Virus record (IMG/VR): IMGVR_UViG_3300024239_000011
Span: 310,001 to 374,000 of that record
Direction: 5' to 3' (one strand)
Length of the DNA: 64,000 nucleotides
The notes under the pieces were generated by a model that ran no database searches, was not told the DNA's origin, and worked only from the letters and a program-made list of their open reading frames with translations. Position 1 is the stretch's first letter. The number at the start of each line of letters is the position of its first letter. This document shows positions 1 through 63,362 of this stretch, in pieces. The position numbers were made by a program, and so were the translations under genes.

Positions 1-2
1 CA

Positions 3-3284: not shown

Positions 3285-3288
3285 TAAT

Positions 3289-3317: not shown

Positions 3318-3340
3318 CATCCACGCAAAGGAGCGAAGCG

Positions 3341-5703: not shown

Positions 5704-5704
5704 T

Positions 5705-10890: not shown

Positions 10891-10898
10891 TAGAAAAC

Positions 10899-10935
10899 CC
10901 TCCATGGACTGCTAAATACGTGCAGTCCATGGAGG
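10899..10935 (+). promoter_or_regulatory. Late promoter inside an RBS-sequestering hairpin
   Basis: Perfect 14-bp inverted repeat cctccatggactgc / gcagtccatggagg. TAAATA is in the loop and the GGAGG RBS is in the 3' arm. Confidence 0.75.
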
Positions 10936-10941
10936 TGCTTG

Positions 10942-11805: not shown

Positions 11806-11816
11806 GGAAGTCCGAT

Positions 11817-38923: not shown

Positions 38924-39370
38924 ATGTCGAAATTCATTCCATCATTGATTGTTACGTTGTTAGTGTCGTCACCGTCCTACGGTCTGGACATTTCGGGGAA
39001 AATTACAGTTTTGGGGGAATGCCAAGCGACATATGCGCAATTGGTCATGATTTCCAATCTAACTGCCGGTTTCTTAACCATGTCTAATGCACCATCCGAA
39101 CAGGTACTCGGTTTTGCGCGTATTGGGCAGCACGCATTGGATGGGTTTGATCAAGCCGACGCAGAAGCCGAACGAATCATTGGAAATGCATCACCAAAGG
39201 ATCGAATTCGGCTTGATGTGATTAATAATCAAACTTTTCAAGAAACCACCAAGACGTGGGAAGAATTAAAAGTGTCGCTTACCACCGGGGCGTCCACCGC
39301 AACAATGTTCATGAAAAATTTGGTGGAAAAATCAAATCAGTGTGATGGTATATTGTCACAGATCGACTAA
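38924..39370 (+). CDS. Putative secreted protein
   Basis: Signal-peptide-like N-terminus; ATAAATA upstream. Confidence 0.55.
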   Translation: MSKFIPSLIVTLLVSSPSYGLDISGKITVLGECQATYAQLVMISNLTAGFLTMSNAPSEQVLGFARIGQHALDGFDQADAEAERIIGNASPKDRIRLDVINNQTFQETTKTWEELKVSLTTGASTATMFMKNLVEKSNQCDGILSQID

Positions 39371-40308
39371 GCGATATTCGCTCTGAGGCAATCATGAATA
39401 TGAATTACACCCATCACCTGATCGGCATCTACCACAATCAAGCTCGTAATGGTACGATCTGTCATCAGCTTCAGAGCATCCACCGCAAATGTATCAGGGG
39501 ACACCGTTTTAGGGTTCCGGGTCATGAAAACATCCACAGGCGTAGTCAACGGAACATGATCGATATTTCGACGGATATCCCCATCCGTGACTAGCCCTAA
39601 TAGCGTATTATCGTCATCCACCACAACCGCACACCCAAGTGCTTTTTTTCCAATGACGAGAATGGCGTCCTTCATCGTCGCGTGAATACACACTAAAGGC
39701 ATTGCTGGTCCTTGATGCATGATCTGCTTGACCAACAGCAATTCCCGCCCAAGCTTTCCACCGGGATGATAATGACCAAATTCTCGTTCGGTCAGTGTCT
39801 CGCTGTAAAGTGCCACTGCCAGCGCATCACCCAATGCTAACGACATCGTGGTTGAGGTCGTTGGTACCAATCCAAGTGGACATGCTTCGCGTTTTGGGAG
39901 GGTTAAAACGACCGTAGCTGCTGCGCCGATGGTGCTACTGGGGTTGGAAGTGATTACTACCACGGGTATCGCCCGGCGCCGACAGTAGTGCATTAGGTTG
40001 AACATTTCCCCGGTTTCGCCGGAATTCGAAATCCCAATGACCGCATCGCCCGGTTGGATCATCCCCATATCACCGTGGTTCGCCTCGGCGGGATGAACGA
40101 AGACCGCCGGTTTCCCTACTGATGATAATGTGGCCGCAATCTTACGGGCAATATGCCCGCTTTTGCCCATACCGGTAACGATTATTCGCCCACTCACTCC
40201 GGTAAGAACTTCACAGGCAGAAGTAAACCTTCCATCAAGGGTATTCGCCAGTTCTTGAATACCATCAGCTTCTTCTTTTAGTGTACGCTTTGCAATGTCG
40301 ATATACAT
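39367..40308 (-). CDS. kpsF: KpsF/GutQ arabinose-5-phosphate isomerase (SIS plus 2 CBS)
   Basis: VTGMGKSGHIARK, HPAEANHGDMG, SNSGET, PTTSTT, HPGGKLG, CBS pair. GAGGTG RBS before MYIDI. Confidence 0.93.
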   Translation of the reverse strand: MYIDIAKRTLKEEADGIQELANTLDGRFTSACEVLTGVSGRIIVTGMGKSGHIARKIAATLSSVGKPAVFVHPAEANHGDMGMIQPGDAVIGISNSGETGEMFNLMHYCRRRAIPVVVITSNPSSTIGAAATVVLTLPKREACPLGLVPTTSTTMSLALGDALAVALYSETLTEREFGHYHPGGKLGRELLLVKQIMHQGPAMPLVCIHATMKDAILVIGKKALGCAVVVDDDNTLLGLVTDGDIRRNIDHVPLTTPVDVFMTRNPKTVSPDTFAVDALKLMTDRTITSLIVVDADQVMGVIHIHDCLRANIA

Positions 40309-40348
40309 ATATTTCACCTCAATACATGAACATATACATACTGCTGAC

Positions 40349-40377
40349 TTGACATGCGGACAATTATTTTCTATACT
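40349..40377 (+). promoter_or_regulatory. Sigma70-type promoter
   Basis: TTGACA-17-TATACT. Confidence 0.7.
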
Positions 40378-40402
40378 GGTTAAAGTCAAGGAGAAAATCC
40401 CC

Positions 40403-40621
40403 ATGCGTTCAATTACCAAAGCCGACGTGGAACACTATTACGGCGGGATGGTTATGACGATGGCACGTTCGTTGGCAACCAAACCGTGGGATGATTTGAC
40501 TTTTAGATCGCGTCAGCGGCTTTTGAACAAAGCAGTAAAAGCACTTCATGCCATGCTCAATAACAAAGAGTGCGTGAGTGCATTGTTCACGTTTACCAGG
40601 GATCGTCTTACCAATAAGTAG
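40403..40621 (+). CDS. Hypothetical protein
   Basis: Has a promoter, AAGGAG RBS and downstream hairpin. Confidence 0.6.
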   Translation: MRSITKADVEHYYGGMVMTMARSLATKPWDDLTFRSRQRLLNKAVKALHAMLNNKECVSALFTFTRDRLTNK

Positions 40622-44263: not shown

Positions 44264-46681
44264 TTACGCCTCTGCCATCTTCTGGATGGTCGCATAGTCG
44301 GTCTTGCCGGTGCCCAGCAACGGGATGGCATCGACCACCTTGATCACCGCCGGAACCGACAGGGCACTGATGCCCTTACTCTTGGCATCTTCCGCCAAGG
44401 CAGCGCGGTTCGCATCCGGATTGGTCGTGAAGAGGACCAACTGTTCGCCCTTCTTCTCGTCCTTGATAGCGACCACGGCGTGCTGGTGTTGTACCCACAG
44501 CGCCGATACCTGGGTTTCGACGGCGGTCAACGACACCATTTCGCCCGCGATCTTGGCGAACCGCTTGGCACGCCCGCGAATGGTGATGAAACCCTGATCG
44601 TCCAGGCTCACCATGTCGCCGGTATCATACCAGCCATCCTCGGGCTGCTGGATGACGCCGGGGTTGTCCGCCTTGAGATAACCCAGCATGACGTTCGGAC
44701 CCCGGACGATCAGGCGGAAAGCATCCTCGACGCCGGGCACCGTGACCAACTTGTAGTCGATCAGGGGCATCAGGCGCCCAACAGTCCCGGAGCGATAGTG
44801 CATCGGGGTGTTGGTGGCGATGACAGGGGCGCATTCGGTCGCGCCGTAGCCCTCGTAGATCGCCCGCTGGAACTTCTCCATGTAGAGCGCGCGAGTGCTG
44901 TCCTTGACCTTCTCAGCGCCCGCAAAGATGTAGCGGATGCTGCGGAAATCATAGGGGTGCGCTTGCTTGGCGTAGCCGTTCAGGAACGTGTCCGTACCAA
45001 ACATGATGGTCACGTTGCGGTCATAGACCAGTTCCGGGATGACTTTGTAGTTCAAAGGGTTCGGGAACAGGAACACCTTGATGCCATTCAGGAACGGCAA
45101 TAGCGTGCCCGCCGTCAGACCAAAGCTGTGGAACATGGGCAGAGCGTTCAGTACGATGTCCTGCGGCGAGAAATCGACCGAGGCAGCCAACTGGTACATG
45201 TTGGATAGCAGGTTCTTGTGCGACAGTACGACGCCCTTCGGGACGCCCTCCGACCCACTGGTGAAAATCACAACCGCCGGGGTATGCGCGGTCAGGTCTT
45301 CGCTGTCATGCAGACTATACGGGGGACGTGTTGCATCATAGTGAATCGCACGGGCATCGGTATAGTCCAAGAATTTACCACGCAACTTGGCGATCAGCCC
45401 GATATTAGCACCGATATCTTCGAGGTAGACCACGTTGACGCCATTCAGTGAATCGTTCTCACCGTTTTCCAACCCCTTGATCACGTCCTGAAGCTTCGCC
45501 TGTTCAACGAAGAACCGGCTGGTGATCACGGTCTTGATCTCCGCTGCTCGGATTGACGCCTGAATATTGCGCAACCCGGTACTGAAATTCAACATGGCGG
45601 GCACACGACCGAACGCCTGAAGGGCAAAGAACGTTACGGCAGTCTTGATGCTGTTGGGCAGCAAAACACCGATAAATTCACCCTGGTTGGTAAACTGGCT
45701 CAATTGACGACCTAGAACCAGTGTCCCCACAATGAAATTCTTGTAGGTTATCGCGGTGATTTCCTTGGTCGTAGGGTCGATGTTTTCCGCAATCACGGTC
45801 TTTTCGCCGTAGGATGCCGATGCATCAAGCAAACCTTCATACAACGTTTGATCAGCACGATCAGTGGCAGCCATCATGGCAACCATTTCATCGTACAGCC
45901 AATTACCAATGGCAATGCGGCGGGTTTTGCCACGCATCGGTACATGACCCGTACCATCACACCGCTCGCATAGGCGACGGTTGTCACCCGGATACAAACC
46001 AGATGCAAAAATGATATCACCGTCGCCATCGCATACAGGGCATTGCTGCTGCCCGATATTGACCTTACGGGGCGGAAGCATGGTCATTTCGAACGGATGC
46101 CCATAATGTACTGGGTTCCGCCCGCGCAGCCGCGACAATGGCGTGAAATGGACACCTTCCAGACGGATGGGGACAATGTTGGCATCCGCTTTATCCGCGA
46201 TCATACCGGGACCGTCGTAAACCTTCATCAGACCATTGGTGACAGTCAATCGTCCCTCTGGAAAAATCACAACCGGCTTGCCGTCCTTAACCAGATTGAC
46301 GAGCGCCTTGATCGCCATTGGGTTGCGTGTGTCGAGGGTCACACAGTTGAAAAACGGCATAACCAATTGCATCCACCACCACTTCGACGCACCAAGATTA
46401 ACGGCGAACGTCGGGTTCCCCGGAATGTAGGTGGCGAGGATGGCAGCATCCACGAAGCTGACATGATTGGCGATATAGATGACGCGATCCCCGGCGAGTT
46501 TGGCGTTTTCCAGCCCCTTCACCGTGATGTTGTTGTGCAGAGCAAAGACAATACGCAAACCCAGACGAACAAAAGGACCGCCGATTTTCTTCAGCACGGC
46601 AAACCACATGTCGATCATACACCGCAACATGTGGTCGATCATCCAGTTATAGACAGTGTTTTTAATCTCACGATCAGTCAT
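44264..46681 (-). CDS. aas: Bifunctional acyltransferase / acyl-ACP synthetase (Aas-like)
   Basis: PlsC motifs ANHVSFVD and IFPEGR; AMP-binding FTSGSEGVPKG, YEGYGATE, WYDTGD, GKTDY. Confidence 0.92.
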   Translation of the reverse strand: MTDREIKNTVYNWMIDHMLRCMIDMWFAVLKKIGGPFVRLGLRIVFALHNNITVKGLENAKLAGDRVIYIANHVSFVDAAILATYIPGNPTFAVNLGASKWWWMQLVMPFFNCVTLDTRNPMAIKALVNLVKDGKPVVIFPEGRLTVTNGLMKVYDGPGMIADKADANIVPIRLEGVHFTPLSRLRGRNPVHYGHPFEMTMLPPRKVNIGQQQCPVCDGDGDIIFASGLYPGDNRRLCERCDGTGHVPMRGKTRRIAIGNWLYDEMVAMMAATDRADQTLYEGLLDASASYGEKTVIAENIDPTTKEITAITYKNFIVGTLVLGRQLSQFTNQGEFIGVLLPNSIKTAVTFFALQAFGRVPAMLNFSTGLRNIQASIRAAEIKTVITSRFFVEQAKLQDVIKGLENGENDSLNGVNVVYLEDIGANIGLIAKLRGKFLDYTDARAIHYDATRPPYSLHDSEDLTAHTPAVVIFTSGSEGVPKGVVLSHKNLLSNMYQLAASVDFSPQDIVLNALPMFHSFGLTAGTLLPFLNGIKVFLFPNPLNYKVIPELVYDRNVTIMFGTDTFLNGYAKQAHPYDFRSIRYIFAGAEKVKDSTRALYMEKFQRAIYEGYGATECAPVIATNTPMHYRSGTVGRLMPLIDYKLVTVPGVEDAFRLIVRGPNVMLGYLKADNPGVIQQPEDGWYDTGDMVSLDDQGFITIRGRAKRFAKIAGEMVSLTAVETQVSALWVQHQHAVVAIKDEKKGEQLVLFTTNPDANRAALAEDAKSKGISALSVPAVIKVVDAIPLLGTGKTDYATIQKMAEA

Positions 46682-46871
46682 GAAGGCAATCCTGCGGCAG
46701 GTTAAGAGGTGAGTTTTAACGAACACCATCCCAACTAGCAAGACCTTAAATATGGCTTTTGCACTTGTTCCTATGGTAAATAAGGTTCGCCGCTGATGCT
46801 CAAACCACACCATAGGCAGGGCATGGTGGCACCCTCACAACCTCCAAACTACACCAAGCAGGAGAGAGTTT

Positions 46872-47983: not shown

Positions 47984-48032
47984 CCATTGCAACCCACTAT
48001 AGCAAACCCTATAATAGGGTACGAGGTGGGTG

Positions 48033-48464
48033 ATGAAATACGTAGATTGTCATTTAGCTGATCAAATTTACACACATATCGATCCAACTGATGGAACGGT
48101 ACGTCATTTCAATGCGTCCGCAATGATTGATGCATGCAAAACCGGTCACTGTCCGTTCAAACGTCTAATAATTCCCATTGAACCATTATTTGTCCAACTT
48201 TGTCTTGAACAGCGCGGAATTGAACCACATCGGTTGGTTCGACTTACTACAGAACAACTTGATGACCCAATTCTTGGCGCACGGTTTCCCGATGGAACAA
48301 CGCTGACAGTTGATGGTCATCATCGTTATGTTCGGCGGTACCAACTAAATCATAAAACCATCACCATGTGGGTCATGTTTCCACTTCATTGGAAACGATT
48401 TTTGATTGATGATTTACCAACGACCAATAGTGCCGATCTTCTTTCTGAATACTCGGGGTTGTAA
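48033..48464 (+). CDS. ParB/Srx-like domain protein
   Basis: PIL..TLTVDGHHR. Confidence 0.55.
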   Translation: MKYVDCHLADQIYTHIDPTDGTVRHFNASAMIDACKTGHCPFKRLIIPIEPLFVQLCLEQRGIEPHRLVRLTTEQLDDPILGARFPDGTTLTVDGHHRYVRRYQLNHKTITMWVMFPLHWKRFLIDDLPTTNSADLLSEYSGL

Positions 48465-48465
48465 A

Positions 48466-48891
48466 ATGTCCATACTTGAAATCAATGACGTTGTTCGGGT
48501 GCAAATGCGCGAGATCATCACCCGTGCGTCAGTGAACCCATATACACAGGCGCAAATTGAGGCATTGATGCGCCTCGGGTCGGCTTCCGGTACTGCCGCC
48601 GACCCTGCGGAAAGAAACAAACTTTTCACTATGACGGTTCCTCACGGGTTTAATGTAACATACACCCATGAGCATCAACCATTTGGTCTTGCACGGCATT
48701 TGTCAGTGAGCGTGCTACGCAAAGGTCGTGTGCCGAATGTTCCCGCTATGGAAATGATCATGCAGGAATTCGGTTTCACATCCGATTTTCAATTGTGTAT
48801 AAACAACGGAACTGTATGGAACGAGAAAATTCCCAACGGAAATTATGCTATCAATGTCATCGAACCAGTTGAAGGATGGGGTGCGGTTTAG
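48466..48891 (+). CDS. Hypothetical protein
   Basis: RHLSVS..GRVP motif; ORF tiling. Confidence 0.6.
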   Translation: MSILEINDVVRVQMREIITRASVNPYTQAQIEALMRLGSASGTAADPAERNKLFTMTVPHGFNVTYTHEHQPFGLARHLSVSVLRKGRVPNVPAMEMIMQEFGFTSDFQLCINNGTVWNEKIPNGNYAINVIEPVEGWGAV

Positions 48892-49241
48892 CTTTCTAGC
48901 CCTTCGGCACATGAAATATTGATCGCGATGAGCGTATCGAGTTTTTCTGGTGTTGGGTTCTCGTAGATTTCCAAGGTTCTACGATCCACGAATGCCGATA
49001 ACCGCAGCAAGTTGGTTCGAAGGTCCGCCGGAAGTGGGCAGTCGTCGGACATCGCATCAGCCTGTACAACCGTCCAGAAACGCTGATTGTACTTTAACGC
49101 ATCGTTGAGGTTGTCGGGGTTCCAGTTATTACGAAGGTCTTGTAATCGCCCAATAGCCGTGCGCAATACACGTGCTTGCACTAGGCGATCACTAGCAAGT
49201 ACCCGATTTGCTTTTTGATATGCGCCGATCCCATTAGACAT
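48888..49241 (-). CDS. flaF: Flagellar biosynthesis regulator FlaF
   Basis: AYQ..ALKYNQRFWT..PLPADLRTNLLRLSAFV..LIAINISCAEGL. Confidence 0.9.
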   Translation of the reverse strand: MSNGIGAYQKANRVLASDRLVQARVLRTAIGRLQDLRNNWNPDNLNDALKYNQRFWTVVQADAMSDDCPLPADLRTNLLRLSAFVDRRTLEIYENPTPEKLDTLIAINISCAEGLES

Positions 49242-49617
49242 TTAGAAGCTCTCCTTCGTACTCGATCAGTTTTTGGCATTCGCGTAGGGCTTTGTAATAC
49301 TGCCCAGCAACAAGATGTTGTTGGATTGCGATAATGAAGGGGTACATAGATGGTGCCGCTTTCATGAGTTCGCCAACGTGATCAAAGAAATCTGTTTGGT
49401 ATTTTTCGATATTGTCCGTGTCTACGTACATCATCTGAATGAACAGGTACGCGACTTTCGATGGGGTGTCGGCGGTTTCAACCGTCAGCACATCTTTCTG
49501 ACGAAGAATTGGCACATCATTGTGGATAGTAATTTCCGTTTTACCGGTTTCAGCACCGGTAATCACGGCGGTACCGACAATGATTTTCTCATTGGGTTTG
49601 AGAACAAGTTTTAGCAT
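49234..49617 (-). CDS. flbT: Flagellin translational regulator FlbT
   Basis: LKLVLKPNEKIIVG..ILRQKDVL..ADTP..YLFIQMMY..YYKALRECQKLIEYE. Confidence 0.92.
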   Translation of the reverse strand: MLKLVLKPNEKIIVGTAVITGAETGKTEITIHNDVPILRQKDVLTVETADTPSKVAYLFIQMMYVDTDNIEKYQTDFFDHVGELMKAAPSMYPFIIAIQQHLVAGQYYKALRECQKLIEYEGELLNV

Positions 49618-49664
49618 TTCATTTGCTCCGCAAGGTCGGGGGTGCCAAAGCACCCCCTATCCTA

Positions 49665-50504
49665 TTAACCGAAAAGACGCAGAACGCCTTGAGCGGACTG
49701 ATTCGCCATGCTCAGCGAGTTAAGAGCAAGCTGGCTACGGGTCTGAAGGGCGAGCAGCTTGGCGCTTTCGTCATTCATGTCCGCATTGGTCAGATCATCG
49801 GCACCAGCACGGTGAGTGGTGATCATGTTCTTGGTGAAATCCGAGCGAATCTTCAGCAAGCTATTGGAGCTACCCAGTGTTGCTGCCGTTGAACGGACGG
49901 TGGACATCGCAGTAGACAAAAGCGCAATGTCGGCATCGATTGCAGCAGTACCAGTTGCCAGGGTCGCATTACCCCAGTCCCCAGCCGCAGTCACCGCCAA
50001 TCCGGTTGCATCACTAGCCGTACCGGTGACAGACATTGATGCGGAACCATCACGATTGAAAGTGACCGTGAGACTGTCCGGGGTACCCTTGATGAGGTTC
50101 ACACCGTCATAGGTAGAGTCCGATGCAATCTTGTCCAACTGAGTACGAAGTGCATCGTACTGAGTTTTGAAAGCAGTGCGGTCAGCCGCAACCGAAGATG
50201 CCTTAGCTTGCTCAGCAAGACCCTTCATTTGTTTCAAAACACCTTCAATGGCGGTTAGACCATCGGTTGCAGTCTTAACGGTATTCATGGCATTGGTAAT
50301 GCCATCCTTTAGAGAAAACAAGTCGTCGGCAGTATCATAGAGATTTTTGGCCCGGAAATAGTTCACCGGGTCATCAATTGCACTGGCAACTCGCTTACCA
50401 GATGCTAAGCGTCCTTGTACGACGCTCATATCACTGTCCGTCCGTTGAAGAGACAGCAGAACATTGCGAACACTTGCATTGAGGGAAATGTTGTCCGTAG
50501 ACAT
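49665..50504 (-). CDS. Flagellin (short alphaproteobacterial type)
   Basis: SVRNVLLSLQ..RLASGKRVASAIDDP, YDGVNL, ADMNDESAKLLALQTRSQL..SMANQSAQGVLRLF. Confidence 0.95.
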   Translation of the reverse strand: MSTDNISLNASVRNVLLSLQRTDSDMSVVQGRLASGKRVASAIDDPVNYFRAKNLYDTADDLFSLKDGITNAMNTVKTATDGLTAIEGVLKQMKGLAEQAKASSVAADRTAFKTQYDALRTQLDKIASDSTYDGVNLIKGTPDSLTVTFNRDGSASMSVTGTASDATGLAVTAAGDWGNATLATGTAAIDADIALLSTAMSTVRSTAATLGSSNSLLKIRSDFTKNMITTHRAGADDLTNADMNDESAKLLALQTRSQLALNSLSMANQSAQGVLRLFG

Positions 50505-50513
50505 GATAGACCT

Positions 50514-50565
50514 CCTCCTGAGGGTATGTTAGTGGATTACTTCCACCACAAATATTTACAGGAGG
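50514..50565 (-). promoter_or_regulatory. Late promoter with RBS-sequestering inverted repeat upstream of flagellin
   Basis: Minus strand reads cctcctG-TAAATA ... caggagg (RBS). Confidence 0.6.
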
Positions 50566-50609
50566 GGGTACTACTTTTACGTAGGTTTTAATTATTCCAT
50601 ACACGCCAC

Positions 50610-50840
50610 GTGATGTTGACCGTCGAACGACTCACCAACCCACGGTTCCCCAGTAAAATTACGGACGAGTACGGGTTTGACCCAACAATCTGGTACCACG
50701 GCACGCGGAGACGATTTGAACAATTCCGTGATCCCGAGAAAGAAACTCACAAATCACAAATTGAGGAACTTGGACCGGTACCAGACCAACTGGTGGTGTT
50801 CAAACCCGAGGATGTTCGAATCCTCGCACGCCACAAATGA
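50610..50840 (+). CDS. Internally deleted ADP-ribosyltransferase-like mini-protein or relic
   Basis: WYHGT..FEQF and VVFKPEDVR, the two ends of an ART-like domain, within 76 aa. Confidence 0.4.
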   Translation: MMLTVERLTNPRFPSKITDEYGFDPTIWYHGTRRRFEQFRDPEKETHKSQIEELGPVPDQLVVFKPEDVRILARHK

Positions 50841-50851
50841 AAAAGGGAGGC

Positions 50852-51211
50852 TTAAGCCTCCCCGTCCTCTTCAAGGTCTGACAACTGAGTATTGGCGCTA
50901 TCAAGAGCGCGAAGTTCCTGCATGGTCAGGATATTATATCCACCCGCACCAAGACGGTTGCGCGGATTACCGCACATATAACAGGAACAAACCTTCAGGT
51001 GATCGTGATTACGCCGAGCGAAGTAATCGCGCTTTTCGAAAACCTCATCCCAGGTTTCCTGACGCACGATAAAGCGGCGTTTAACACGATCAATCCAATC
51101 ATAATGATGCTCTGGCTGACGATGCCAACGAGAGGCAACACGGCGCCCACGAGCAATCATACGTTCGCGGTCGCGAATACGACGTGCGCGTTTTGGTTCT
51201 TTAAAAGACAT
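50852..51211 (-). CDS. Small basic protein with CSCxMCGNPR motif
   Basis: Arg-rich; GGAGG RBS inside a long hairpin; downstream terminator. Confidence 0.7.
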   Translation of the reverse strand: MSFKEPKRARRIRDRERMIARGRRVASRWHRQPEHHYDWIDRVKRRFIVRQETWDEVFEKRDYFARRNHDHLKVCSCYMCGNPRNRLGAGGYNILTMQELRALDSANTQLSDLEEDGEA

Positions 51212-51366
51212 TCTTCTTCCTCCGAGTTCGCTCTAGAGCGAGCCGCCGGAAGAAATAACCGACCGCCCTAGAGCATGTTTCGGAGGAAGAAGGGATTTTG
51301 TATGTTCTGATCCATGCTGCTATTTACGCTAAATAGGTCTAGAATGTCAACCGGGAGATTTGATAA

Positions 51367-53349
51367 ATGGGAATTTCTTTTGGCGGTGGGGTGAACCCAT
51401 TTGGTACGTTTAAAATACGCACTAACATCCCACCTTCATGGGGCACCAATAGTGGTACAATTGGTTCGGCTAATGGTGGAATTCCCTACAATTTCACATT
51501 TGTTGCCACTGACATCGATCACGGACCTATTCCTCTATCGATTCACTTGGCTTCTGGAACGCTTCCTGCTGGGTTGAATATATCGGATATGAGCATAGTC
51601 GGAACACCAGTTAATATCCCAGGAACCTATGTGTTTACCTTACGGCTGACCGATGGATTGGCGGAAGCATTTCGAACTTTTAGTCTTGATGTCACCAACC
51701 AGAATCCAATATGGCAAACCAACGCCGGTTCTCTCGGGACGTTTTATACAAATACTGCGGTAAACCAAACATTATTGGCAACCGACCCTAATAACGATTC
51801 GATCACGTTTGGTGTTGTTGAGGGGGCACTCCCGCCAGGAATTACATTATCAAGTGCAGGAAACCTTAGCGGTACTCCAACCATGACTGGTATTACCAAT
51901 TTCACAGTACGCGCGTCCGATAATCACGGCGGTGCCGTTGATCGTGTTTTTACAATGACCGTTTCCGAAAACATCCCAATGACTGGTTTGGTTGGTTGGT
52001 GGGACACATCTACGGTGACGGCATCTACGGGACAAACTGTCACAACCCTGACCGATCTCAGCGGTGCTGGTAATCACATGACCGGTAATGGAACATGCTC
52101 CATCGGACCAAATAGTATGAAAGTCGCAAGTGGGTCATTTACGGCTCCACATAGTACGACATTTAATCATAATGGCGAATACACCACGTTTACGGTATAC
52201 AAATCCACCGTTCCGAATAACACATGGAGTTCTATTGGGTTTAACAAAGACGCTTATCCATCTGGGGCAACTCAATACCAGAACTATGTTTACACCAATG
52301 GCAGTGTTCCAACGGTATATGCATCTATAGCAACAGTCCCCGGCACTGCAAGTTACGCACAGAATTATGCCCATACAAATAATGAATGGACTATTGGGTG
52401 TTTCCGTGTGAACTACAATGGAACCCAGTCATGGTTGAATTATTACAAAAATGGTATTAATCATGGTGATGGTGCTAAAATTACCGGGAAGACGGAAAAC
52501 AATACTTCGAACGCAGTATTGAATATTGGTTCTGGCACCCTTGCCGAATGCTTGGTGTACACTCGTAAACTTACAGATACCGAACGAATTCAGGTCGAGA
52601 ACTACCTATCATCAAAATGGGGATTGTGGGTTGCTTCGAACAACACCATGATGAAAACAGATGGTCTACTCTTTGATTTTGATGCCACCGCCATTTCCGC
52701 GACAGATGGGCAAACAATTACTGCATGGAATGATCGGTCTCAGTACGGGCATCATTTGACCGGAAGCGGAAAATATTTAACCAATCAAGTTGGCGGCAAA
52801 CCGGTGCTGGAAATCAGCAGTGGTCAAAGTTTTTATCGCGCCAATCAAGCAACTCTTCACCACAACGGTGAATACTCCGGATTTTATGTATATAAACAGA
52901 ATGGCTGGGATCAATATACCCCTCTCATCATAAAATCGGATTGGAGTAATAACGGACCAACCGAATTTCAATTTGCGCAGACCCAAAATGACAATTCAAC
53001 ATGGTACGGGTACTGCGGTGGAAATGGTGGTCGTGGCGGGAATGTTATTTCGGTAAGCACTCTTCAGCCTCAAAATACGTTTAGCATCGTTGCACAAACG
53101 GTCACCTACAATGGTTCTACCAGCTTGATGTCGTTCTTTCGTAATGGCGTTTCTAAAGGGTCCGGGTCACAAACAGGTAAAACAAATCAAGCAGCAGCAG
53201 GGCTATCAGTTGGTGGTGTAAATGCGACCACCACAAAACAATACATTGCTCAAATTATTATGTTTACTCGTCGCCTATCTAATGCGGAGCAGAATTGGGT
53301 TCAAGGCTATTTGTCCTCCAAATACGATATCGCAGTGACACAATCATAA
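51367..53349 (+). CDS. Virion fibre/decoration protein: two Ig-like repeats plus two LamG/concanavalin-like domains
   Basis: SGTLPAGL..GTP and GALPPGITLS..GTP; duplicated (G/F)WD..W.D.S..G.H..VE.YLSSK(W/Y). CTAAATA at 51329-51335. Confidence 0.75.
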   Translation: MGISFGGGVNPFGTFKIRTNIPPSWGTNSGTIGSANGGIPYNFTFVATDIDHGPIPLSIHLASGTLPAGLNISDMSIVGTPVNIPGTYVFTLRLTDGLAEAFRTFSLDVTNQNPIWQTNAGSLGTFYTNTAVNQTLLATDPNNDSITFGVVEGALPPGITLSSAGNLSGTPTMTGITNFTVRASDNHGGAVDRVFTMTVSENIPMTGLVGWWDTSTVTASTGQTVTTLTDLSGAGNHMTGNGTCSIGPNSMKVASGSFTAPHSTTFNHNGEYTTFTVYKSTVPNNTWSSIGFNKDAYPSGATQYQNYVYTNGSVPTVYASIATVPGTASYAQNYAHTNNEWTIGCFRVNYNGTQSWLNYYKNGINHGDGAKITGKTENNTSNAVLNIGSGTLAECLVYTRKLTDTERIQVENYLSSKWGLWVASNNTMMKTDGLLFDFDATAISATDGQTITAWNDRSQYGHHLTGSGKYLTNQVGGKPVLEISSGQSFYRANQATLHHNGEYSGFYVYKQNGWDQYTPLIIKSDWSNNGPTEFQFAQTQNDNSTWYGYCGGNGGRGGNVISVSTLQPQNTFSIVAQTVTYNGSTSLMSFFRNGVSKGSGSQTGKTNQAAAGLSVGGVNATTTKQYIAQIIMFTRRLSNAEQNWVQGYLSSKYDIAVTQS

Positions 53350-55528: not shown

Positions 55529-56743
55529 TTAGAAAGTATACCAATTCAACGGAATCAGATCGCGGATGCTCTCGATCTTGGTTGAGGTGCCTGTGTTCTT
55601 CAGCACGAAGTCACGGACCATAGCGAAGGCGTTCTTGCCATCCCAAACTTGGAACGACAACGGACGAAGGCGGCTGTCCAACTTCTGCGAAGCCCCCAGT
55701 GCGTATTCCTTCTTCGCCTGCTTTTCATCGCCGCCCACTGCCTTCAGAATCTCTTCTTTGGCGGTCGCGACGTAGGTTTCCAACTGCTTGGCTTGTTTGG
55801 CGATTTCATGGTTCAACGCATCGGTGAATGCACTCAGTCGGTTGCGATCAGCTTCCTCCATGAATGCCATGGCGTCATCCATACTCTCGCTGAGAACGAG
55901 TTCCCACACGTTCTTCTCAATGGCGATAAGTTCTTTCGCCTTGTGAATACGGCAGTAATGTTCGTTCTTGACCTTGTACATCCGCCCATCAGCAAAGCGG
56001 ATCACATAACCTTCGCCTTCAGTTTCCCCCTTTGTTCTCTCCAAGAAAGCCTGGATATCTGCAATACTCGACCCGAACACCTCGACTACCGGAATACCAA
56101 ACGGCTGTGCCATCTGCACCATGTCTTCATAGGGCACGTAGTAGCCCTTGATCATATGTCGAATAGCGGTCAACACCAGCATGTCTTCCGGGTAATCTAC
56201 GACAATTCTTTGTTTACGCGAACACCACTCAAAGATAGGGGTAAAGCCGTTCTCCAACATGGATGCCATGAAATTTACGTAGCCAATTTCATCATGCCCG
56301 AACGCAAATTCCTGCGCAGGGATAGCAACGTCAGTCGGACCCATCTTGGTGCAGAGGATCATCTTTCCGCCCAGAATCATGGGATGGATCATGCTGCCAT
56401 CCATCTTCGCCATGATGCGGAGATCAGACGACCAATTGACCTGATGCGGTTGAGTTTCCTCGCGTTCACCCACATTGAAGAATTTGTGATAAACACGTGC
56501 CAAAATCTTCCCCGTGGCAGAGCAGAACTTGATGCCACGAGCTTCCCGACGAACAATCGCCTTTAGACGATCACGGGGATCATCTATAGAAATCAAATCA
56601 GGGAAAGTATGGGCGAAGTTGACCGCGTAATTCACAACGGTAAAGCCGTCGCGCTCGCCTACAATCCACTCTTCACCACGGACGCCATTCTCGTCGGTCA
56701 ACGCCCACAACAGGTCGTCTATATGCTGTATTTGCGGAAACAC
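55529..56743 (-). CDS. T4 Rnl1-type RNA ligase
   Basis: REARGIKF, YHKFFNVGE, KMDGSMI, TPIFEW, EGYVI, YKVK. Confidence 0.9.
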   Translation of the reverse strand: MFPQIQHIDDLLWALTDENGVRGEEWIVGERDGFTVVNYAVNFAHTFPDLISIDDPRDRLKAIVRREARGIKFCSATGKILARVYHKFFNVGEREETQPHQVNWSSDLRIMAKMDGSMIHPMILGGKMILCTKMGPTDVAIPAQEFAFGHDEIGYVNFMASMLENGFTPIFEWCSRKQRIVVDYPEDMLVLTAIRHMIKGYYVPYEDMVQMAQPFGIPVVEVFGSSIADIQAFLERTKGETEGEGYVIRFADGRMYKVKNEHYCRIHKAKELIAIEKNVWELVLSESMDDAMAFMEEADRNRLSAFTDALNHEIAKQAKQLETYVATAKEEILKAVGGDEKQAKKEYALGASQKLDSRLRPLSFQVWDGKNAFAMVRDFVLKNTGTSTKIESIRDLIPLNWYTF

Positions 56744-56893: not shown

Positions 56894-58156
56894 ATGGAAT
56901 TCACCCCTCTTGAAATTCTCACCATTCTGCTTGGTATTTCGACCGCTTGTTATTCTGCGGTTCGAAAATTCACCAAGCTACCGCTGACCATCGGTATGGT
57001 CATGGCGTCGCTGGCTGCGTCTTACGGGATGATTGGGCTGGAAATGCTATTCCCCGGCTCGGGTATTCGCGCCATGGTCGAGGGCATCATCGGCAGCGGG
57101 AACTTCTCGAAGATCGTACTGGAATTCGCGCTGACCCCGTTGGTCTTTGCTACCGCGATGGAAGTGGACATCGACCAACTCAAGAGCCGGTGGAAATCCG
57201 TGCTGGTGCTTTCCACGGTCAGCGTGCTGATTTCCACCGCACTGTTCGGGATGCTGTTGCCTTCGGCTGCACTGATCGTGGGTAGCTCGATGACCGTGAT
57301 GGGCGCCTTGCTGCTTGGGTCGATGCAGTCGGCAACCGACCCGGTGGCGGTCAACGCGCTGCTGAAGGAACTCCCGTTCGTCCCCGACAGCCTCAAGATC
57401 AAAATTTCTGGTGAAAGCTTGGTCAATGATGGCGTTGCCGTTGTGGTCTACCTCGTCATGCTCTCGATGGCACAAGCTGCGGGAAATGCCGATCTGAGCT
57501 ACAGCCAAGCCGGGTGGTTGTTTGTTCAAGAAGCTGGCGGGGGGCTGGTCATCGGTGGGTTGGTCGCCGCCTTTATTTACCGTTGGACAAAAGCGCATGA
57601 CGAAGGTGAACTGGAATTCCTAATCACGCTGTTCGGTGTTCTGATCCTGATCGTGGTCGGTATCCGTTTGCACGTCAGCGCGCCGCTTGCTGCCCTGGTG
57701 GTGGGGATCGTGATTGGAAATTGGGGTGTTCGTTTCGCCATGAGCGATACCACTCATCAAGTCGTCCACACAGTCTGGCGGGTGATTGACGTAACTCTGA
57801 ATGCGATCCTGTTCACGCTGATCGGCACCGTCGTGATCATCATCAACCATGACGCCAAACATGTGTTGTTCTCAGTTGCCGCAATCGCCGTGTCGCTGGT
57901 GGCGCGGTTTGTATCGGTGGCAATACCGCTCAAACTGCTTGGATGGTTTACCAATGAAAAACCCACCAAAGGTGCGACCCGTGTGTTGACTTGGGGCGGT
58001 TTACGAGGTGGTATTCTGGTGGCGTTGGCGCTGTCATTACCCGACACCATCCCCGGCAAGAGCTACATTCTCGCGGGTGCTTACGGTATCGTTCTATGGA
58101 CCATCATCGTCCAAGGGCTAACCGTGAAATGGCTAATCCTGCGAGTGGTCAAGTAG
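56894..58156 (+). CDS. CPA1-family Na+/H+ antiporter (NhaP-like)
   Basis: SATDPVAV, GESLVNDG, WGGLRG; about 12 TM segments. Confidence 0.92.
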   Translation: MEFTPLEILTILLGISTACYSAVRKFTKLPLTIGMVMASLAASYGMIGLEMLFPGSGIRAMVEGIIGSGNFSKIVLEFALTPLVFATAMEVDIDQLKSRWKSVLVLSTVSVLISTALFGMLLPSAALIVGSSMTVMGALLLGSMQSATDPVAVNALLKELPFVPDSLKIKISGESLVNDGVAVVVYLVMLSMAQAAGNADLSYSQAGWLFVQEAGGGLVIGGLVAAFIYRWTKAHDEGELEFLITLFGVLILIVVGIRLHVSAPLAALVVGIVIGNWGVRFAMSDTTHQVVHTVWRVIDVTLNAILFTLIGTVVIIINHDAKHVLFSVAAIAVSLVARFVSVAIPLKLLGWFTNEKPTKGATRVLTWGGLRGGILVALALSLPDTIPGKSYILAGAYGIVLWTIIVQGLTVKWLILRVVK

Positions 58157-58670: not shown

Positions 58671-59258
58671 TTACGGACGCTTCGAGATCACGTCGTCAAC
58701 CAGACCCAGCGCCTTCGCCTCTTCGGCTGACAGAAACGTATCGCGGTCCAACTTGTCTTCCCATACCTCAAGGGCAACGCCGGTATGTTCGGCATACTTC
58801 TTGGTCAGCTTGTCCTTGATGTTCTGAATTTCCTTCGCCTGGATTTGGATGTCACTACACATACCACCAGCACCACCGGACGGCTGGTGTACCATGACGC
58901 GAGCATTTGGCAGGATGAAACGCTTACCCTTAGCACCAGCCATGAGTAAGAACGAACCCATCGATGCTGCCTGACCAATACACACAGTTGAGACATCCGG
59001 CTTGATGAACTGCATCGTGTCGTAAATGGCAAGACCGGAGGTTACTACACCGCCCGGTGAATTGATGTACATATGAATGTCCGCGTTCGGATCATCACTC
59101 TCCAAGAAAAGAAGCTGGGCACAAACCAGTTCAGCAGTGTGGTCATCAATAGCACCATTGATGAACAGCACTCGTTCTTTCATCAATCTGCTGAAAAGAT
59201 CGTAGCTGCGTTCACCGCGACCACTCTGTTCAACAACAATCGGAACAAGATTCGACAT
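58671..59258 (-). CDS. clpP: ATP-dependent Clp protease proteolytic subunit
   Basis: YDLFSRL, YINSPGG, AASMGS, MVHQP, DRD. Confidence 0.97.
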
Positions 59259-60861: not shown

Positions 60862-62192
60862 GTTGCTTTCGTGGCTTTGTACCGATTGTACTCTATATGT
60901 GCTTCGTCTTCAGTAAATCTATGCTTATTACTATCATAGATCATGTATTGAAATGCATATCCATTTCCTATAACCGCCTCTCGTTTGGCGTTATTTCGAG
61001 GAAAACTATCCCCAAACGTGAACACACTTTTCACTTCAATGATCAGCTTTTCGGATGGTACATAAATGTCAGGATGATACAAACGTTCACGACCCATATA
61101 ATTGTAGCGGAAAGATGGTACATCTTTTCCAAAATAAAGGAGTTGTTCTTGGTAATGCATTAAGAGATCGTCACATGCCCAATCTTCATACCCCTGAACC
61201 TTGATAACCTTTCCTGAGGGCAACACGTAGTCTTTGTTACGATAGCAACCCTTCCTCGTTGCGTCCCACCATGCATCACTTCGGATCATGGTTCGAAAAG
61301 CATCAGTATGAGCGAAATGTTCGACCCCATAACGGTCGAGCATCGTGCGGCGTGCTTTGATGAATACACTACCACCCGTCCGCATGCAATTTTCACCATA
61401 TACTTGACGCCGAGTTGCCATCATTTTCGTTGAGAATTGTTGCCGAACTCCATCATCCTTGTATTTCTCAATCATTATTTCAGAACGATGTGTTTTTGCA
61501 CTGGGGCATTCTTGGTAATATGGCGAACAACACCATTTCGAGTTGTCGTACCCAGATGTCATGAGTTCATAATGCGCTGCCTGCCCACAGCCGTAATCAC
61601 AAACATGATTGCTATTCTCATGAAATACCCCTTCGCGTTTTTTACCACGTAATGCTTCGCTGATTTTGCGTCCGTAGCCGGGGCAATCCGATATTTGTTC
61701 TACACATCGCCATTGCCACGTTACTTCACTGAAATGCGTCCCGGTTGCCCCACAGTGCGCGCAAATCGGCGGTGGGATTTCACGAGCATTCAACTGTCCA
61801 GGGTTGGTTACGCCATATCGTTCGACCAGCGTCTTTTCAATTTTGTCCCGAACCTCCGGGGTGCGTTGGGCAAATTCATCACCGTACCGATCCCGGTTGG
61901 TTGCTTTTCGCTTCTCAAGAGTTTGTGTATTCGTAGCCGCGCATTTCTCCGAACAATACCGGGAGTACCCTTTATCTCGACCCGGCACTTTCCACTGCGT
62001 GGCGCTTCCACACGTCGGGCAACACGGAATGTCATCACCATGGATCACGTGCCAACATTTTCGCTGCAAACACCAATCATCGGGATACATCACCAAATAG
62101 GTCGCAAGTTCTTCCCAGTGATCCCACTTAGGAAGGTTGTACCATTTCATACGATTTGACGTATTAAGGTAATCAATAAGACGCGATTTCAT
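60858..62192 (-). mobile_element. Putative homing endonuclease (zinc fingers, RYG repeats, PD-(D/E)XK nuclease)
   Basis: Repeats ERYGV/DRYG; VQGYE, YHPDIY..IIEVKS. TATAAATA at 62236-62243 overlaps a 14-bp hairpin at 62203-62238. Confidence 0.75.
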
Positions 62193-62252
62193 GGTGTTCT
62201 CCATAGTCAGGTGGACTTTTAGTTGTCCACCTGACTATTTATACAACTTCCG

Positions 62253-63362
62253 TCAAGCTTCTAATATAAGTTCTTCGTATTTATCAGAAAACCACTCCCA
62301 GTTGCGCATCAAATCCGGCATAAACGGTAGGTTCTCTGACTTCAACGCGATACGTACAGCCAGGATGATCATTTCGCGCTGGAAGTTCTTGTCCACGAAA
62401 GCGAGGAAGTTGTCAGCCATTTCGAACCACGGCGTCAAATCGCTGCGGTCCTGGGCAAGCTTCAACTGCTTCTTCAACTCGTAGCACAGCGAAGTGGTCA
62501 GCGAATACTTCACATCAAGACGGAGATCGGAGGGGATCGTCTTACGTTCACCAGTAAGAATGGTGATGGCGCGCGGTAGCTTGACCGTGTGACGCAGAAC
62601 CGCCATGAAACGCAGGGCGGCGGCATCACCGACGCAACCAGCGATCCACTTCAGAAGGTCTTCGTCCTGCTGGGGCGACATTTCTTCCGTGAATTCTTCG
62701 TCCCACAGCGCCTCGGACACGAACGACCATGTGCGAGGGGTCTGGAAACCACGGCTGGCAGAGCGAGGATTGAACTGGAAAAGATCGTCTTCTTTGGCGC
62801 TCAAATAACCAACCACGTCCGGATGGATGCCGTTTTCATATGCCCACTTCTGCCAATCCGGGAACCAACGCATAAGCTCAAAATGTACCAGACGGTTGGC
62901 AAGGGCGCTCGGCATGCTAACCGCAACAGCGCGGTCAGATTCGCGGTTACCAGCGGCTAGGAGGGCGCAATTCGGCGGGAGGTGGTATTCACCGATCTTG
63001 CGATCCAACACCCACTGTAGCGCCGCGCCCATGACCATCTTCGGGGCAGCGTTGATTTCGTCCAAGAAAATGATTGCGGAGCTATCGGGATCATCCGGCA
63101 ATTCGCTCGGATGTGCGTATTCCATCTTGTTGGTTTTTGGGTTGTAGAACGGAATGCCGCGAAGGTCGCTGGCTTCCTTGAGCAGCAAACGAATATCAAT
63201 GACCGGACGGTTCTGTTCTATTGCAATCTGCTTAACGATATCAGATTTGCCTAGACCCGGCGGACCCCAGATCATAGCAGGACGCTTGAGGCGAATCGAC
63301 TTGCGTAGCTGGCGCTTCAACGCGCTGGGGATAACGCGAAGAGGTTCGTGCGACGTACTCAT
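62253..63362 (-). CDS. MoxR-like AAA+ ATPase
   Basis: WGPPGLGKS, DLRGIP, FLDEIN, AAGNR, ALANR, TPRTW. Typical partner of DUF2201/VWA proteins. Confidence 0.9.
   Translation of the reverse strand: MSTSHEPLRVIPSALKRQLRKSIRLKRPAMIWGPPGLGKSDIVKQIAIEQNRPVIDIRLLLKEASDLRGIPFYNPKTNKMEYAHPSELPDDPDSSAIIFLDEINAAPKMVMGAALQWVLDRKIGEYHLPPNCALLAAGNRESDRAVAVSMPSALANRLVHFELMRWFPDWQKWAYENGIHPDVVGYLSAKEDDLFQFNPRSASRGFQTPRTWSFVSEALWDEEFTEEMSPQQDEDLLKWIAGCVGDAAALRFMAVLRHTVKLPRAITILTGERKTIPSDLRLDVKYSLTTSLCYELKKQLKLAQDRSDLTPWFEMADNFLAFVDKNFQREMIILAVRIALKSENLPFMPDLMRNWEWFSDKYEELILEA

What the first reader, a model, noticed from the sequence alone, without database searches (positions are those of the whole stretch)
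48888..50565. Phage-encoded flagellin-flbT-flaF operon rewired to a phage late promoter
Seen: an intact 279-aa flagellin followed by flbT and flaF. Upstream is GTAAATA, with a 5' cctcctg able to pair with the caggagg RBS, the same late-control design as the structural genes. A GC hairpin (49638-49657) separates flagellin from flbT. Established: FlbT and FlaF control flagellin translation and export in alphaproteobacteria. Inference: the phage remodels or silences the host filament late in infection (excluding flagellotropic competitors or avoiding progeny re-adsorption), or uses flagellin as a virion component.
Basis: partly seen in the sequence, partly recalled or inferred. Interest (0 to 1): 0.78.

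Follow-up and report, generated by a model that had tools for sequence, protein, structure and literature searches.

The report
Giant phage carries a flagellin module
A very large T4-like phage, and a whole group of its relatives, carries an intact bacterial flagellin gene with its two dedicated regulators, and has put it under its own late promoter, so a lytic virus probably alters its host's swimming filament during infection.

Summary
On the minus strand lie an intact flagellin gene (50504-49665), flbT (49617-49234) and flaF (49241-48888). A GC hairpin (49657-49638) follows the flagellin gene, and GTAAATA sits 48 nt before its ATG.

The record is a fragment of a T4-like huge phage, with a Gp23 capsid protein, a gp55-type late sigma factor and 66 tRNAs. 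The locus is not a chimera: at least six independent assemblies show it with the same neighbours.

TAAATA is the phage's late-promoter core. It occurs in 145 of 887 upstream regions against 24 expected, and precedes the portal, sheath and baseplate genes. The flagellin site has weak flanks, but all 8 phage flagellin genes examined carry TAAATA, against 7 of 65 bacterial ones.

The arm 5' of the promoter pairs with the ribosome-binding site (-32.9 kcal/mol, z -4.3). This layout is enriched genome-wide (15 genes against 1.7 expected). It marks endonuclease and spanin genes rather than structural genes, as in T4 genes e, 49 and I-TevI.

The cassette was captured whole from a Rhodospirillaceae-like bacterium. 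The bacterial leader was kept and the promoter replaced.

The phage flagellins form one clade that conserves a surface loop which varies in bacteria. What the flagellin does (most likely export and filament remodelling) is inferred, not shown.

The parts
49665..50504 (-). Flagellin gene, 279 aa, short D0-D1 type
   Evidence: Pfam Flagellin_N and Flagellin_C. Aligns end to end with Caulobacter flagellins, E 2e-46. AF2 model pLDDT 84.6; TM 0.77-0.79 to FljK/M/N/L filament subunits. All family-invariant columns are kept.
49234..49617 (-). flbT, 127 aa, post-transcriptional regulator of flagellin synthesis
   Evidence: PF07378, E 3.3e-37, over the full profile. All invariant columns are kept. Natural variants: 7 synonymous, 5 nonsynonymous.
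48888..49241 (-). flaF, 117 aa, flagellin secretion chaperone family; overlaps flbT by 8 nt
   Evidence: PF07309, E 8.5e-27. All invariant columns are kept. Natural variants: 15 synonymous, 2 nonsynonymous.
50553..50559 (-). GTAAATA: T4-type late-promoter core (TAAATA at 50558-50553); predicted start of the late transcript near G 50547
   Evidence: TAAATA occurs in 145 of 887 upstream regions against 24 expected, with a purine 6 nt downstream. A gp55-type sigma factor is encoded. The motif precedes portal, sheath, baseplate and giant virion protein genes. It is present before 8 of 8 phage flagellin genes. The flanks of this site score low.
50559..50574 (-). 5' arm (anti-Shine-Dalgarno), lying just upstream of the late promoter and so absent from the late transcript
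   Evidence: Pairs with 50520-50505. The long form folds at -32.9 kcal/mol, z -4.27. The design is enriched genome-wide, 15 genes against 1.7 expected.
50505..50520 (-). Ribosome-binding region (CAGGAGGAGG plus spacer), the 3' arm of the sequestering hairpin
   Evidence: It is open in the short form that starts at 50547 (z -1.2).
50531..50547 (-). Hairpin at the 5' end of the predicted late transcript; part of the leader inherited from bacterial flagellin genes
   Evidence: Fold. A leader hairpin with an AGAA-type loop occurs in 47 of 65 bacterial leaders (12 expected) and 6 of 7 phage leaders (1.4 expected). The loop in this copy is a weak match.
49638..49657 (-). GC hairpin between flagellin and flbT, 8 bp, no T-run; a likely attenuator or 3' stabiliser that sets flagellin well above the regulators
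   Evidence: A hairpin at the same place in relatives L007, L012 and L010 is followed by T-runs there.
50844..50863 (-). Terminator-like hairpin with T-run after the upstream minus-strand gene (51211..50852); insulates the flagellin unit
   Evidence: This is a consensus scan only.

Best explanation
This is a bacterial flagellin expression cassette (flagellin, FlbT, FlaF). An ancestor of a clade of T4-like jumbo phages captured it whole from a Rhodospirillaceae-like alphaproteobacterium, and the clade has kept it under selection since.

The phage replaced the bacterial promoter with its own gp55-type late promoter (TAAATA). It kept the bacterial 5' leader, which carries the likely FlbT-responsive elements.

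In this phage the promoter sits inside a long hairpin. The 5' arm of that hairpin hides the ribosome-binding site on any transcript that starts further upstream. Only late transcripts, which start about 6 nt after TAAATA, should therefore be translated. T4 uses the same trick for genes e, 49 and I-TevI.

The hairpin after the flagellin gene lets only part of the transcription reach flbT-flaF.

Inferred steps:
- FlaF delivers the phage flagellin to the host's flagellar export machine.
- FlbT couples translation of the flagellin to that export.
- The phage-type subunit, with its own conserved outer loop, is built into the host filament late in infection and changes the filament surface or properties.

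Shown: gene identity and integrity, phage origin, clade-wide conservation, the promoter motif and the hairpin.
Inferred: timing, export, incorporation into the filament, and the benefit to the phage.
For: Identity and integrity.

Phage, not chimera:
- Gp23 capsid protein, gp55-type sigma factor, 66 clustered tRNAs.
- The same neighbours appear in six or more assemblies, and DNA contigs span the locus.

Late promoter:
- Motif enrichment and sequence logo.
- The motif precedes portal, sheath, baseplate and virion protein genes.
- 8 of 8 phage flagellin genes against 7 of 65 bacterial ones, Fisher p 4.8e-7.

Hairpin:
- Fold z -4.27.
- 15 genes against 1.7 expected genome-wide.
- The other bearers are endonuclease VII-like, HNH and spanin genes, matching the T4 cases in PMC3014915.

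Capture of the whole cassette:
- The same gene order occurs in 44 of the 80 bacterial loci.
- The tree nests a phage-only clade (SH-aLRT 96) inside Rhodospirillaceae-type flagellins.
- The best bacterial identity is 48%.

Leader kept.

Selection:
- 22 synonymous against 7 nonsynonymous variants in flaF plus flbT.
- Relatives at 53-65% identity are still intact.

Phage-specific isoform: the surface loop, residues 161-180, is 69% identical within the phage clade against 32% among the bacterial set.

Roles of FlaF and FlbT in Caulobacter: PMC7591256.
Against: - The flanks of the flagellin TAAATA site score low (-2.37), and G at -1 is a minority base (12%).
- There is no direct expression or transcript-start data.
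- The one RNA-labelled run that could be laid out holds a piece reaching 50566, upstream of the predicted start, and the tool rates the run as probably DNA.
- The anti-Shine-Dalgarno arm is not conserved in relatives.
- Three relatives also have sigma-70-like -35 boxes, so they may also express the gene early.
- Many relatives carry flagellin without flbT-flaF nearby.
- The complex prediction gave no answer.
- Flagellin adds only at the distal tip of a filament, so late synthesis could change only newly grown filament (established knowledge).
Confidence: 0.5

Rival explanations
1. Maintenance of motility (the psbA-type logic). The phage shuts down host gene expression and supplies flagellin so that the infected cell can keep growing and repairing its filament and keep swimming. 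The aim is not to alter the filament.
For: T4-like phage with late expression. The cassette comes complete with chaperone and regulator, and the host-type leader is kept.
Against: Phage flagellins are at most 48% identical to any bacterial flagellin found. They share a phage-specific conserved surface loop. A simple replacement copy would be expected to track the host protein.
Confidence: 0.2
2. Silencing. The phage FlbT, with the phage flagellin as co-repressor (as FljJ acts with FlbT in Caulobacter), represses translation of host flagellin mRNAs. This saves resources or stops filament growth.
For: The FlbT-FljJ co-repression precedent (PMC7591256). Host and phage leaders share the AGAA hairpin and the AGAA-GGAG motif, so one FlbT could act on both.
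Against: The phage also carries FlaF, which in Caulobacter removes the co-repressor by secretion (PMC7591256). Many related phages have flagellin but no flbT nearby. The flagellin keeps all the features of a structural subunit. The complex prediction gave no information on FlbT.
Confidence: 0.12
3. Virion or intracellular structural use. The flagellin is a late phage structural protein, for example a fibre or decoration, that assembles without export.
For: It shares the late promoter with structural genes. In relative L010 it lies beside the Gp23, scaffold and prohead-protease genes. The surface loop is conserved in the phage clade, and the D0 ends are somewhat less conserved than in bacteria. 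Flagellin occurs alone in several relatives.
Against: All phage copies keep the long bacterial leader with its control motifs (48-85 nt, against 20-40 nt for most late genes). This phage keeps the export chaperone FlaF under purifying selection. In L010 the gene is on the opposite strand from the capsid genes. No virion flagellin turned up in the paper library.
Confidence: 0.13
4. Artefact or passenger. The locus is a host-phage misassembly, or a recently acquired gene set with no function for the phage.
For: The genes are of bacterial type, and the record is a metagenome assembly.
Against: At least six assemblies from different samples give the same junctions. GC content is even across the locus. 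Phage promoter and hairpin are in place. Diverged phage relatives keep the gene. Variants are mostly synonymous.
Confidence: 0.03

Closest known systems
Flagellin Remodelling prophages (FR-phi) of Enterobacter, with TldR and FliC-P (PMC13418256)
   Same: The phage carries its own flagellin isoform together with a regulator of flagellin expression. That paper also notes related loci that add the post-transcriptional regulator CsrA.
   Different: Those phages are temperate siphoviruses acting in lysogeny. Their regulator is an RNA-guided, nuclease-dead TnpB relative that blocks host fliC transcription. Here the phage is a T4-like huge phage with no integrase found in the 543-kb record. The partners are FlbT and FlaF. 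Expression is from a late lytic promoter. The two TnpB genes in the genome keep the catalytic D-E-D triad and lie 168-298 kb away.
Caulobacter crescentus flagellin checkpoint: FljJ-FlbT co-repression and the FlaF secretion chaperone (PMC7591256)
   Same: The same three protein families, and the same short D0-D1 flagellin fold (TM 0.77-0.79). A leader-based control is likely to be kept.
   Different: The module is encoded by a virus and driven by a viral sigma factor. Which role the phage flagellin plays, structural or FljJ-like, is unknown.
T4 genes e, soc, 49 and I-TevI: late promoter inside a hairpin that hides the ribosome-binding site (PMC3014915)
   Same: TAAATA-type promoter, with the 5' arm upstream of it, so that early read-through RNA is silent and late RNA is translated. 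In this phage the same design marks endonuclease VII-like, HNH and spanin genes.
   Different: Here it is applied to a flagellin gene of bacterial origin. Whether transcripts from upstream exist has not been shown.
Host-derived auxiliary genes of T4-like cyanophages such as psbA (own knowledge)
   Same: A T4-like phage carries a copy of a highly expressed host structural protein.
   Different: The phage flagellin is far from any known host copy and has its own conserved surface.

Membership tests
Bacterial flagellin (Pfam PF00669 + PF00700) | N- and C-terminal helical domains above the curated cut-offs | tested here: met
   65.6 and 38.2 bits against cut-offs of 26.6 and 23.
Bacterial flagellin (Pfam PF00669 + PF00700) | D0-D1 fold of a filament subunit | tested here: met
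   AF2 model pLDDT 84.6. TM 0.77-0.79 to Caulobacter FljK/M/N/L filament structures.
Bacterial flagellin (Pfam PF00669 + PF00700) | Export through the flagellar type III system and polymerisation into a filament | not testable with these tools
   Needs filament or secretome proteomics, or complementation.
FlbT (PF07378) | Full-length profile match and the family's invariant residues | tested here: met
   127.7 bits, profile positions 1-125 of 125. All 10 invariant columns are kept.
FlbT (PF07378) | Binds the flagellin mRNA leader and controls translation | not testable with these tools
   Only indirect evidence: the bacterial-type leader motifs are kept.
FlaF (PF07309) | Full-length profile match and the family's invariant residues | tested here: met
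   93.8 bits. All 13 invariant columns are kept.
FlaF (PF07309) | Binds flagellin as a secretion chaperone | tested here: inconclusive
   Complex prediction returned 'no answer'.
T4-type late promoter | TATAAATA-like -10 element with no -35 element, enriched before late genes | tested here: met
   TAAATA in 145 of 887 upstream regions against 24 expected. It precedes portal, sheath and baseplate genes. The flagellin site has the core but weak flanks.
T4-type late promoter | A phage-encoded gp55-family sigma factor | tested here: met
   phrog_12791 E 3.9e-83 and phrog_234 E 1.1e-20 at G000 258632-259477.
T4-type late promoter | A transcript start a few nt downstream, active late and dependent on replication (gp33, gp45) | not testable with these tools
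   gp33 and gp45 were not searched for. No usable transcript data.
T4 e / I-TevI type RBS-sequestering hairpin | The 5' arm upstream of the late promoter pairs with the Shine-Dalgarno sequence or start codon | tested here: met
   About 14 bp, -32.9 kcal/mol, z -4.27. Genome-wide, 15 genes against 1.7 expected.
T4 e / I-TevI type RBS-sequestering hairpin | Upstream-initiated early transcripts run into the gene | tested here: inconclusive
   A weak sigma-70-like site lies at 50619-50591, but such sites are no more frequent than in shuffles. A piece from run X5 reaches 50566, but the run may be DNA.
FR-phi / TldR flagellar remodelling system | A phage-encoded flagellin isoform distinct from the host's | tested here: met
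   Phage-only clade, at most 48% identical to bacterial flagellins, with its own conserved loop.
FR-phi / TldR flagellar remodelling system | An adjacent nuclease-dead TnpB-like repressor (TldR) | tested here: not met
   The two TnpB genes lie far from the locus and keep the RuvC D-E-D triad when aligned to ISDra2 TnpB.
FR-phi / TldR flagellar remodelling system | Temperate phage acting in lysogeny | tested here: not met
   No tyrosine integrase in the 543-kb record, and a T4-like core. The record is incomplete, so this rests on part of the genome.

The most novel reading that the evidence does not exclude
A lineage of lytic T4-like jumbo and mega phages has domesticated flagellin into a phage-specific late protein with its own conserved outer surface. 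Either it turns the infected cell's flagellum into a virus-designed filament, for example to block flagellum-dependent phages, to stop progeny sticking to debris, or to steer the infected cell. Or it has been taken over as a virion or other phage-built structure. Either would be a kind of host-organelle takeover not described for lytic phages.
Probability: 0.3. Interest if true: 0.85.

Novelty: new variant of a known kind. Interest (0 to 1): 0.7.

Why it matters
Phage-encoded flagellin is so far known from temperate prophages that reshape the flagellum of their lysogen (PMC13418256). This locus shows the idea in a very different setting.

- It is a clade of lytic, T4-like huge phages of alphaproteobacteria, found in subsurface and wastewater samples.
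- The flagellin type is different, and so are the regulators (FlbT, FlaF).
- It has strict late-only control of the kind T4 uses for lysis and nuclease genes.

If the protein is exported, lytic phages can edit a host surface organelle during infection. That bears on superinfection exclusion, on the arms race around flagellum-dependent phages, and on the behaviour of infected cells.

The locus also offers a natural promoter-swap experiment. The bacterial leader, with its recurring AGAA hairpin and AGAA-GGAG motif, has been kept for a long time without the bacterial promoter. That points to where FlbT acts.

Tried and rejected
- blastn of the locus and tblastn of the flagellin against GenBank phages found no relative. 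The only hits were two unannotated Listeria contigs at 22% identity.
- A viral-contig scan with FlbT alone found nothing.
- T4 gp55 as a single protein found nothing in the genome. The PHROG profiles did find the sigma factor.
- Terminase_6N is absent from the 543-kb record. This was explained later: the record is truncated, and the terminase lies just beyond its end on the 869-kb contig.
- Rfam has no family for the flagellin leader.
- Complex prediction of flagellin, FlbT and FlaF gave 'no answer', so it is not used as evidence.
- The sigma-70 consensus scan found no more sites than in shuffles, so an early promoter upstream of the hairpin is not claimed.
- NeuB and tyrosine integrase were not found in the 543-kb part.
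- Three wastewater runs labelled RNA-Seq hold parts of the flagellin gene. In the one run that was laid out, only the flagellin gene and its leader were covered, not the flanks. The tool rates that run as probably DNA, and its contigs carry no strand. This is suggestive at most.
- The chimera hypothesis is rejected.
- The TldR-type reading is rejected.
Full report
WHAT IS THERE

The three genes lie on the minus strand.
- Flagellin, 50504..49665, 279 aa.
- flbT, 49617..49234, 127 aa.
- flaF, 49241..48888, 117 aa.

All three match their Pfam families over the full length and well above the curated cut-offs.

The flagellin aligns end to end with the short D0-D1 flagellins of Caulobacter (E 2e-46). 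Its AlphaFold model (pLDDT 84.6) superposes on the FljK, FljM, FljN and FljL filament subunits with TM 0.77-0.79. All columns that are invariant in alignments with bacterial homologues are kept in the three phage proteins.

GTAAATA is at 50559-50553, 48 nt before the ATG.

THE GENOME

The window is part of a 543,035-bp IMG/VR virus record with 48.7% GC and 66 tRNA genes, most in one cluster. The record encodes:
- a T4-type major capsid protein, Gp23;
- a gp55-family late sigma factor, phrog_12791 E 3.9e-83;
- portal, tail sheath, baseplate wedge and giant virion proteins.

No tyrosine integrase was found. It is therefore a T4-like huge phage.

The locus is not a chimera.
- The identical flagellin, with the same neighbours on both sides, occurs in at least six independent assemblies from ENA, JGI and Logan.
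- A 10.6-kb contig of a DNA run spans 48368-53000.
- GC content does not change across the locus.

THE PROMOTER

GTAAATA as a 7-mer is not enriched (60 copies against 73 expected). The hexamer TAAATA is:
- It is the most enriched word in the 100 nt before genes, present in 145 of 887 upstream regions against 24 expected.
- It lies mostly 20-40 nt before the start codon.
- A or C is preferred at -1, and a purine lies 6 nt downstream.

This is the core of the T4 late promoter TATAAATA (PMC3014915), and the matching sigma factor is present.

I scanned the ten largest genes that the motif precedes outside the window. Six are virion genes: portal, tail sheath, baseplate wedge, a tail-fibre-like protein and a giant virion protein. 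The giant virion protein uses the same GTAAATA variant. One is a homing endonuclease, and none is a replication gene.

The flagellin site has the core but poor flanks, scoring -2.37 against a median of 1.51 for upstream sites. Taken alone it would be an uncertain call. Comparison with relatives settles it. All 8 flagellin genes found in phage contexts have TAAATA 48-85 nt before the ATG, two of them as a perfect TATAAATA, against 7 of 65 bacterial flagellin genes (Fisher p 4.8e-7). Three relatives (L007, L012, L101) also have sigma-70-like -35 boxes, so they may be transcribed early as well.

THE HAIRPIN

The 16 nt just 5' of TAAATA (50574-50559) pair with the ribosome-binding region up to 1 nt before the AUG.
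- A transcript that includes this arm folds at -32.9 kcal/mol (z -4.27, none of 200 shuffles as good).
- A transcript starting at the predicted late start (G 50547) leaves the ribosome-binding site open.

I tested whether this is a recurring design. Among the 126 TAAATA sites lying 15-70 nt before a start codon, 15 have at least 7 nt of perfect complementarity between the 16 nt before the motif and the ribosome-binding region. Permuting the pairings gives 1.7.

I scanned ten of the other bearers. They include an endonuclease VII-like protein, an HNH endonuclease, an Rz-like spanin and a SAM decarboxylase. These are the gene classes for which T4 uses this device: e, 49, I-TevI and soc (PMC3014915).

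It does not mark structural genes. Whether transcripts enter from upstream is open: a terminator-like hairpin lies at 50863-50844, and the sigma-70-like site at 50619-50591 is no better than chance. The arm is not conserved in relatives.

ORIGIN

The closest proteins in the 5.8-billion-protein collection are 53-65% identical.

Every close homologue whose context I read lies in phage-like DNA.
- L010 has Gp23, scaffold, prohead protease and UvsY beside it.
- L012, L099, L100, L010 and L103 share other genes with this genome, up to 80% identical, whereas the bacterial control loci share only the flagellar genes.
- L103 is a 230-kb IMG/VR contig.
- L007 and L101 lie in ORFan-rich DNA with phage-type genes: ClpX, IF3 and T4 RNA ligase in L007; ClpX, ribosomal protein S21 and ClpS in L101.

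In a maximum-likelihood tree the window's flagellin sits in a 15-member clade and a 22-member clade, both with SH-aLRT 96 and neither with any named bacterium. These are nested in a clade dominated by Rhodospirillaceae. The best identity to a genome of a named species set is 48%.

In bacteria the order flagellin, flbT, flaF on one strand is common: 44 of the 80 bacterial loci have all three within 3 kb. The cassette was therefore taken whole.

Bacterial flagellin leaders carry two recurring features:
- a hairpin with an AGAA-type loop, in 47 of 65 leaders against 12 expected from shuffles;
- a (C)YAGAA-N-GGAG ribosome-binding region.

The phage copies keep both: 6 of 7 have the hairpin, against 1.4 expected. 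The phage thus kept the leader and changed the promoter. No Rfam family covers this leader.

SELECTION AND A PHAGE-SPECIFIC FEATURE

Strain variants in one DNA run are mostly synonymous: flaF 15 to 2, flbT 7 to 5.

Along the flagellin, the stretch 161-180 is an extended loop between the beta-hairpin and the C-terminal D1 helix in the model, which I infer to be outward-facing. It is the second most conserved 20-residue block of the phage clade (69% pairwise identity, after the C-terminal block 241-260) and the least conserved in the Rhodospirillaceae-type set (32%). The D0 ends are somewhat less conserved in phages than in bacteria.

This argues for a distinct phage isoform rather than a copy that tracks the host. 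flbT-flaF accompany the flagellin only in part of the clade.

HOW IT MOST LIKELY WORKS

Shown: a late-type promoter, a hairpin that can silence longer transcripts, an intercistronic hairpin, an intact subunit, and an intact regulator and chaperone.

Established for the families: FlaF is the flagellin secretion chaperone. FlbT, with the flagellin FljJ, represses flagellin translation until secretion starts (PMC7591256).

Inferred:
- Late in infection the phage makes its own flagellin.
- FlaF hands the flagellin to the host export machine, and FlbT ties its translation to export.
- The filament that grows from then on carries the phage surface.

I put about 0.5 on export and incorporation with a changed filament. 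The rivals are plain motility maintenance (0.2), a virion or intracellular structural role (0.13), silencing of host flagellin (0.12), and passenger or artefact (0.03).

The retained long leader in all phage copies, and FlaF under purifying selection, favour use of the host flagellar pathway over a virion role. The distance from any host flagellin and the conserved loop favour remodelling over maintenance.

The complex prediction gave no answer. Three runs labelled RNA hold parts of the flagellin gene; in the one run that was laid out, only the flagellin gene and its leader were covered, and that run may be DNA.

COMPARISON WITH WHAT IS KNOWN

The nearest described system is the Flagellin Remodelling prophage of Enterobacter (PMC13418256): a phage flagellin plus a regulator of flagellin expression.

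This locus fails two defining features of that system.
- No adjacent nuclease-dead TnpB relative. The genome's two TnpB genes keep the catalytic triad and lie far away.
- No sign of lysogeny.

It works like that system in outline but is not a member. Searches of the paper library for flagellin together with huge phages, jumbo phages or viral auxiliary genes found no description of such a locus. The GenBank phage collection has no homologue.

VERDICT

I rate it a new variant of a known kind, interest 0.7.

Noticed in passing
Whole record (G000), left end; locus L118: The 543,035-bp record is not the whole genome. An ENA contig of 869,618 bp (ERZ27245855 k141_178484) is 100% identical over G000 1-11912. 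It then continues at least 9.2 kb into DNA that G000 lacks, including the terminase large subunit. If collinear, it extends about 81 kb and 245 kb past the two ends. If it is not a misassembly, the phage genome is at least about 870 kb, larger than the largest phage genome I recall (about 735 kb, own knowledge).
   Followed up: partly
G000 62078-62278 (+) and 191984-192184 (-); loci L132, L133: Two diverged copies (83% nt identity over 1.36 kb) of a 392-aa TnpB gene. They align end to end with ISDra2 TnpB (E 3.9e-73) and keep the RuvC D-E-D residues. These are RNA-guided nuclease genes inside a huge phage.
   Followed up: partly
window 4483-10890 (+): Five consecutive radical SAM genes (phrog_1802, E 1e-25 to 3.5e-38) lie directly after virion and tail-fibre-like genes.
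   Followed up: no
window 48025-48368: Minor contigs in two DNA runs skip 342 nt, removing most of ORF 48033-48464, two genes downstream of flaF. This is a presence/absence variant in the population.
   Followed up: no
L103 4001-4824 (IMGVR_UViG_3300023235_000008, 230 kb): In this related jumbo phage the flagellin homologue (53% identical) is split between two reading frames near codon 56, in all three contigs from three samples. This is either a frameshift, a pseudogene or a shared assembly error. The record holds no FlbT.
   Followed up: partly
window 44264-46813 (-), 56894-58156 (+), 55529-56743 (-), 58671-59258 (-), 39367-40419 (-): Host-like cargo surrounds the locus: a fused acyltransferase/AMP-binding protein (about 820 aa), a Na+/H+ exchanger, T4 RNA ligase 1, ClpP, and a SIS+CBS sugar isomerase (gene tables).
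   Followed up: no
G000 151302-151673 (-) and 201975-203135: A SAM decarboxylase gene, with a hairpin-embedded late promoter, and an ornithine/DAP decarboxylase gene that is 80% identical in relative L012. Together they suggest phage-encoded polyamine synthesis.
   Followed up: no
Bacterial loci L019-L098, 5' leaders of flagellin genes: A recurring leader architecture: a hairpin with an AGAA loop, then (C)YAGAA-N-GGAG at the ribosome-binding site. It occurs in flagellin genes of Rhodospirillaceae and other lineages that have FlbT and FlaF, and no Rfam family covers it. It is a candidate FlbT recognition element.
   Followed up: partly
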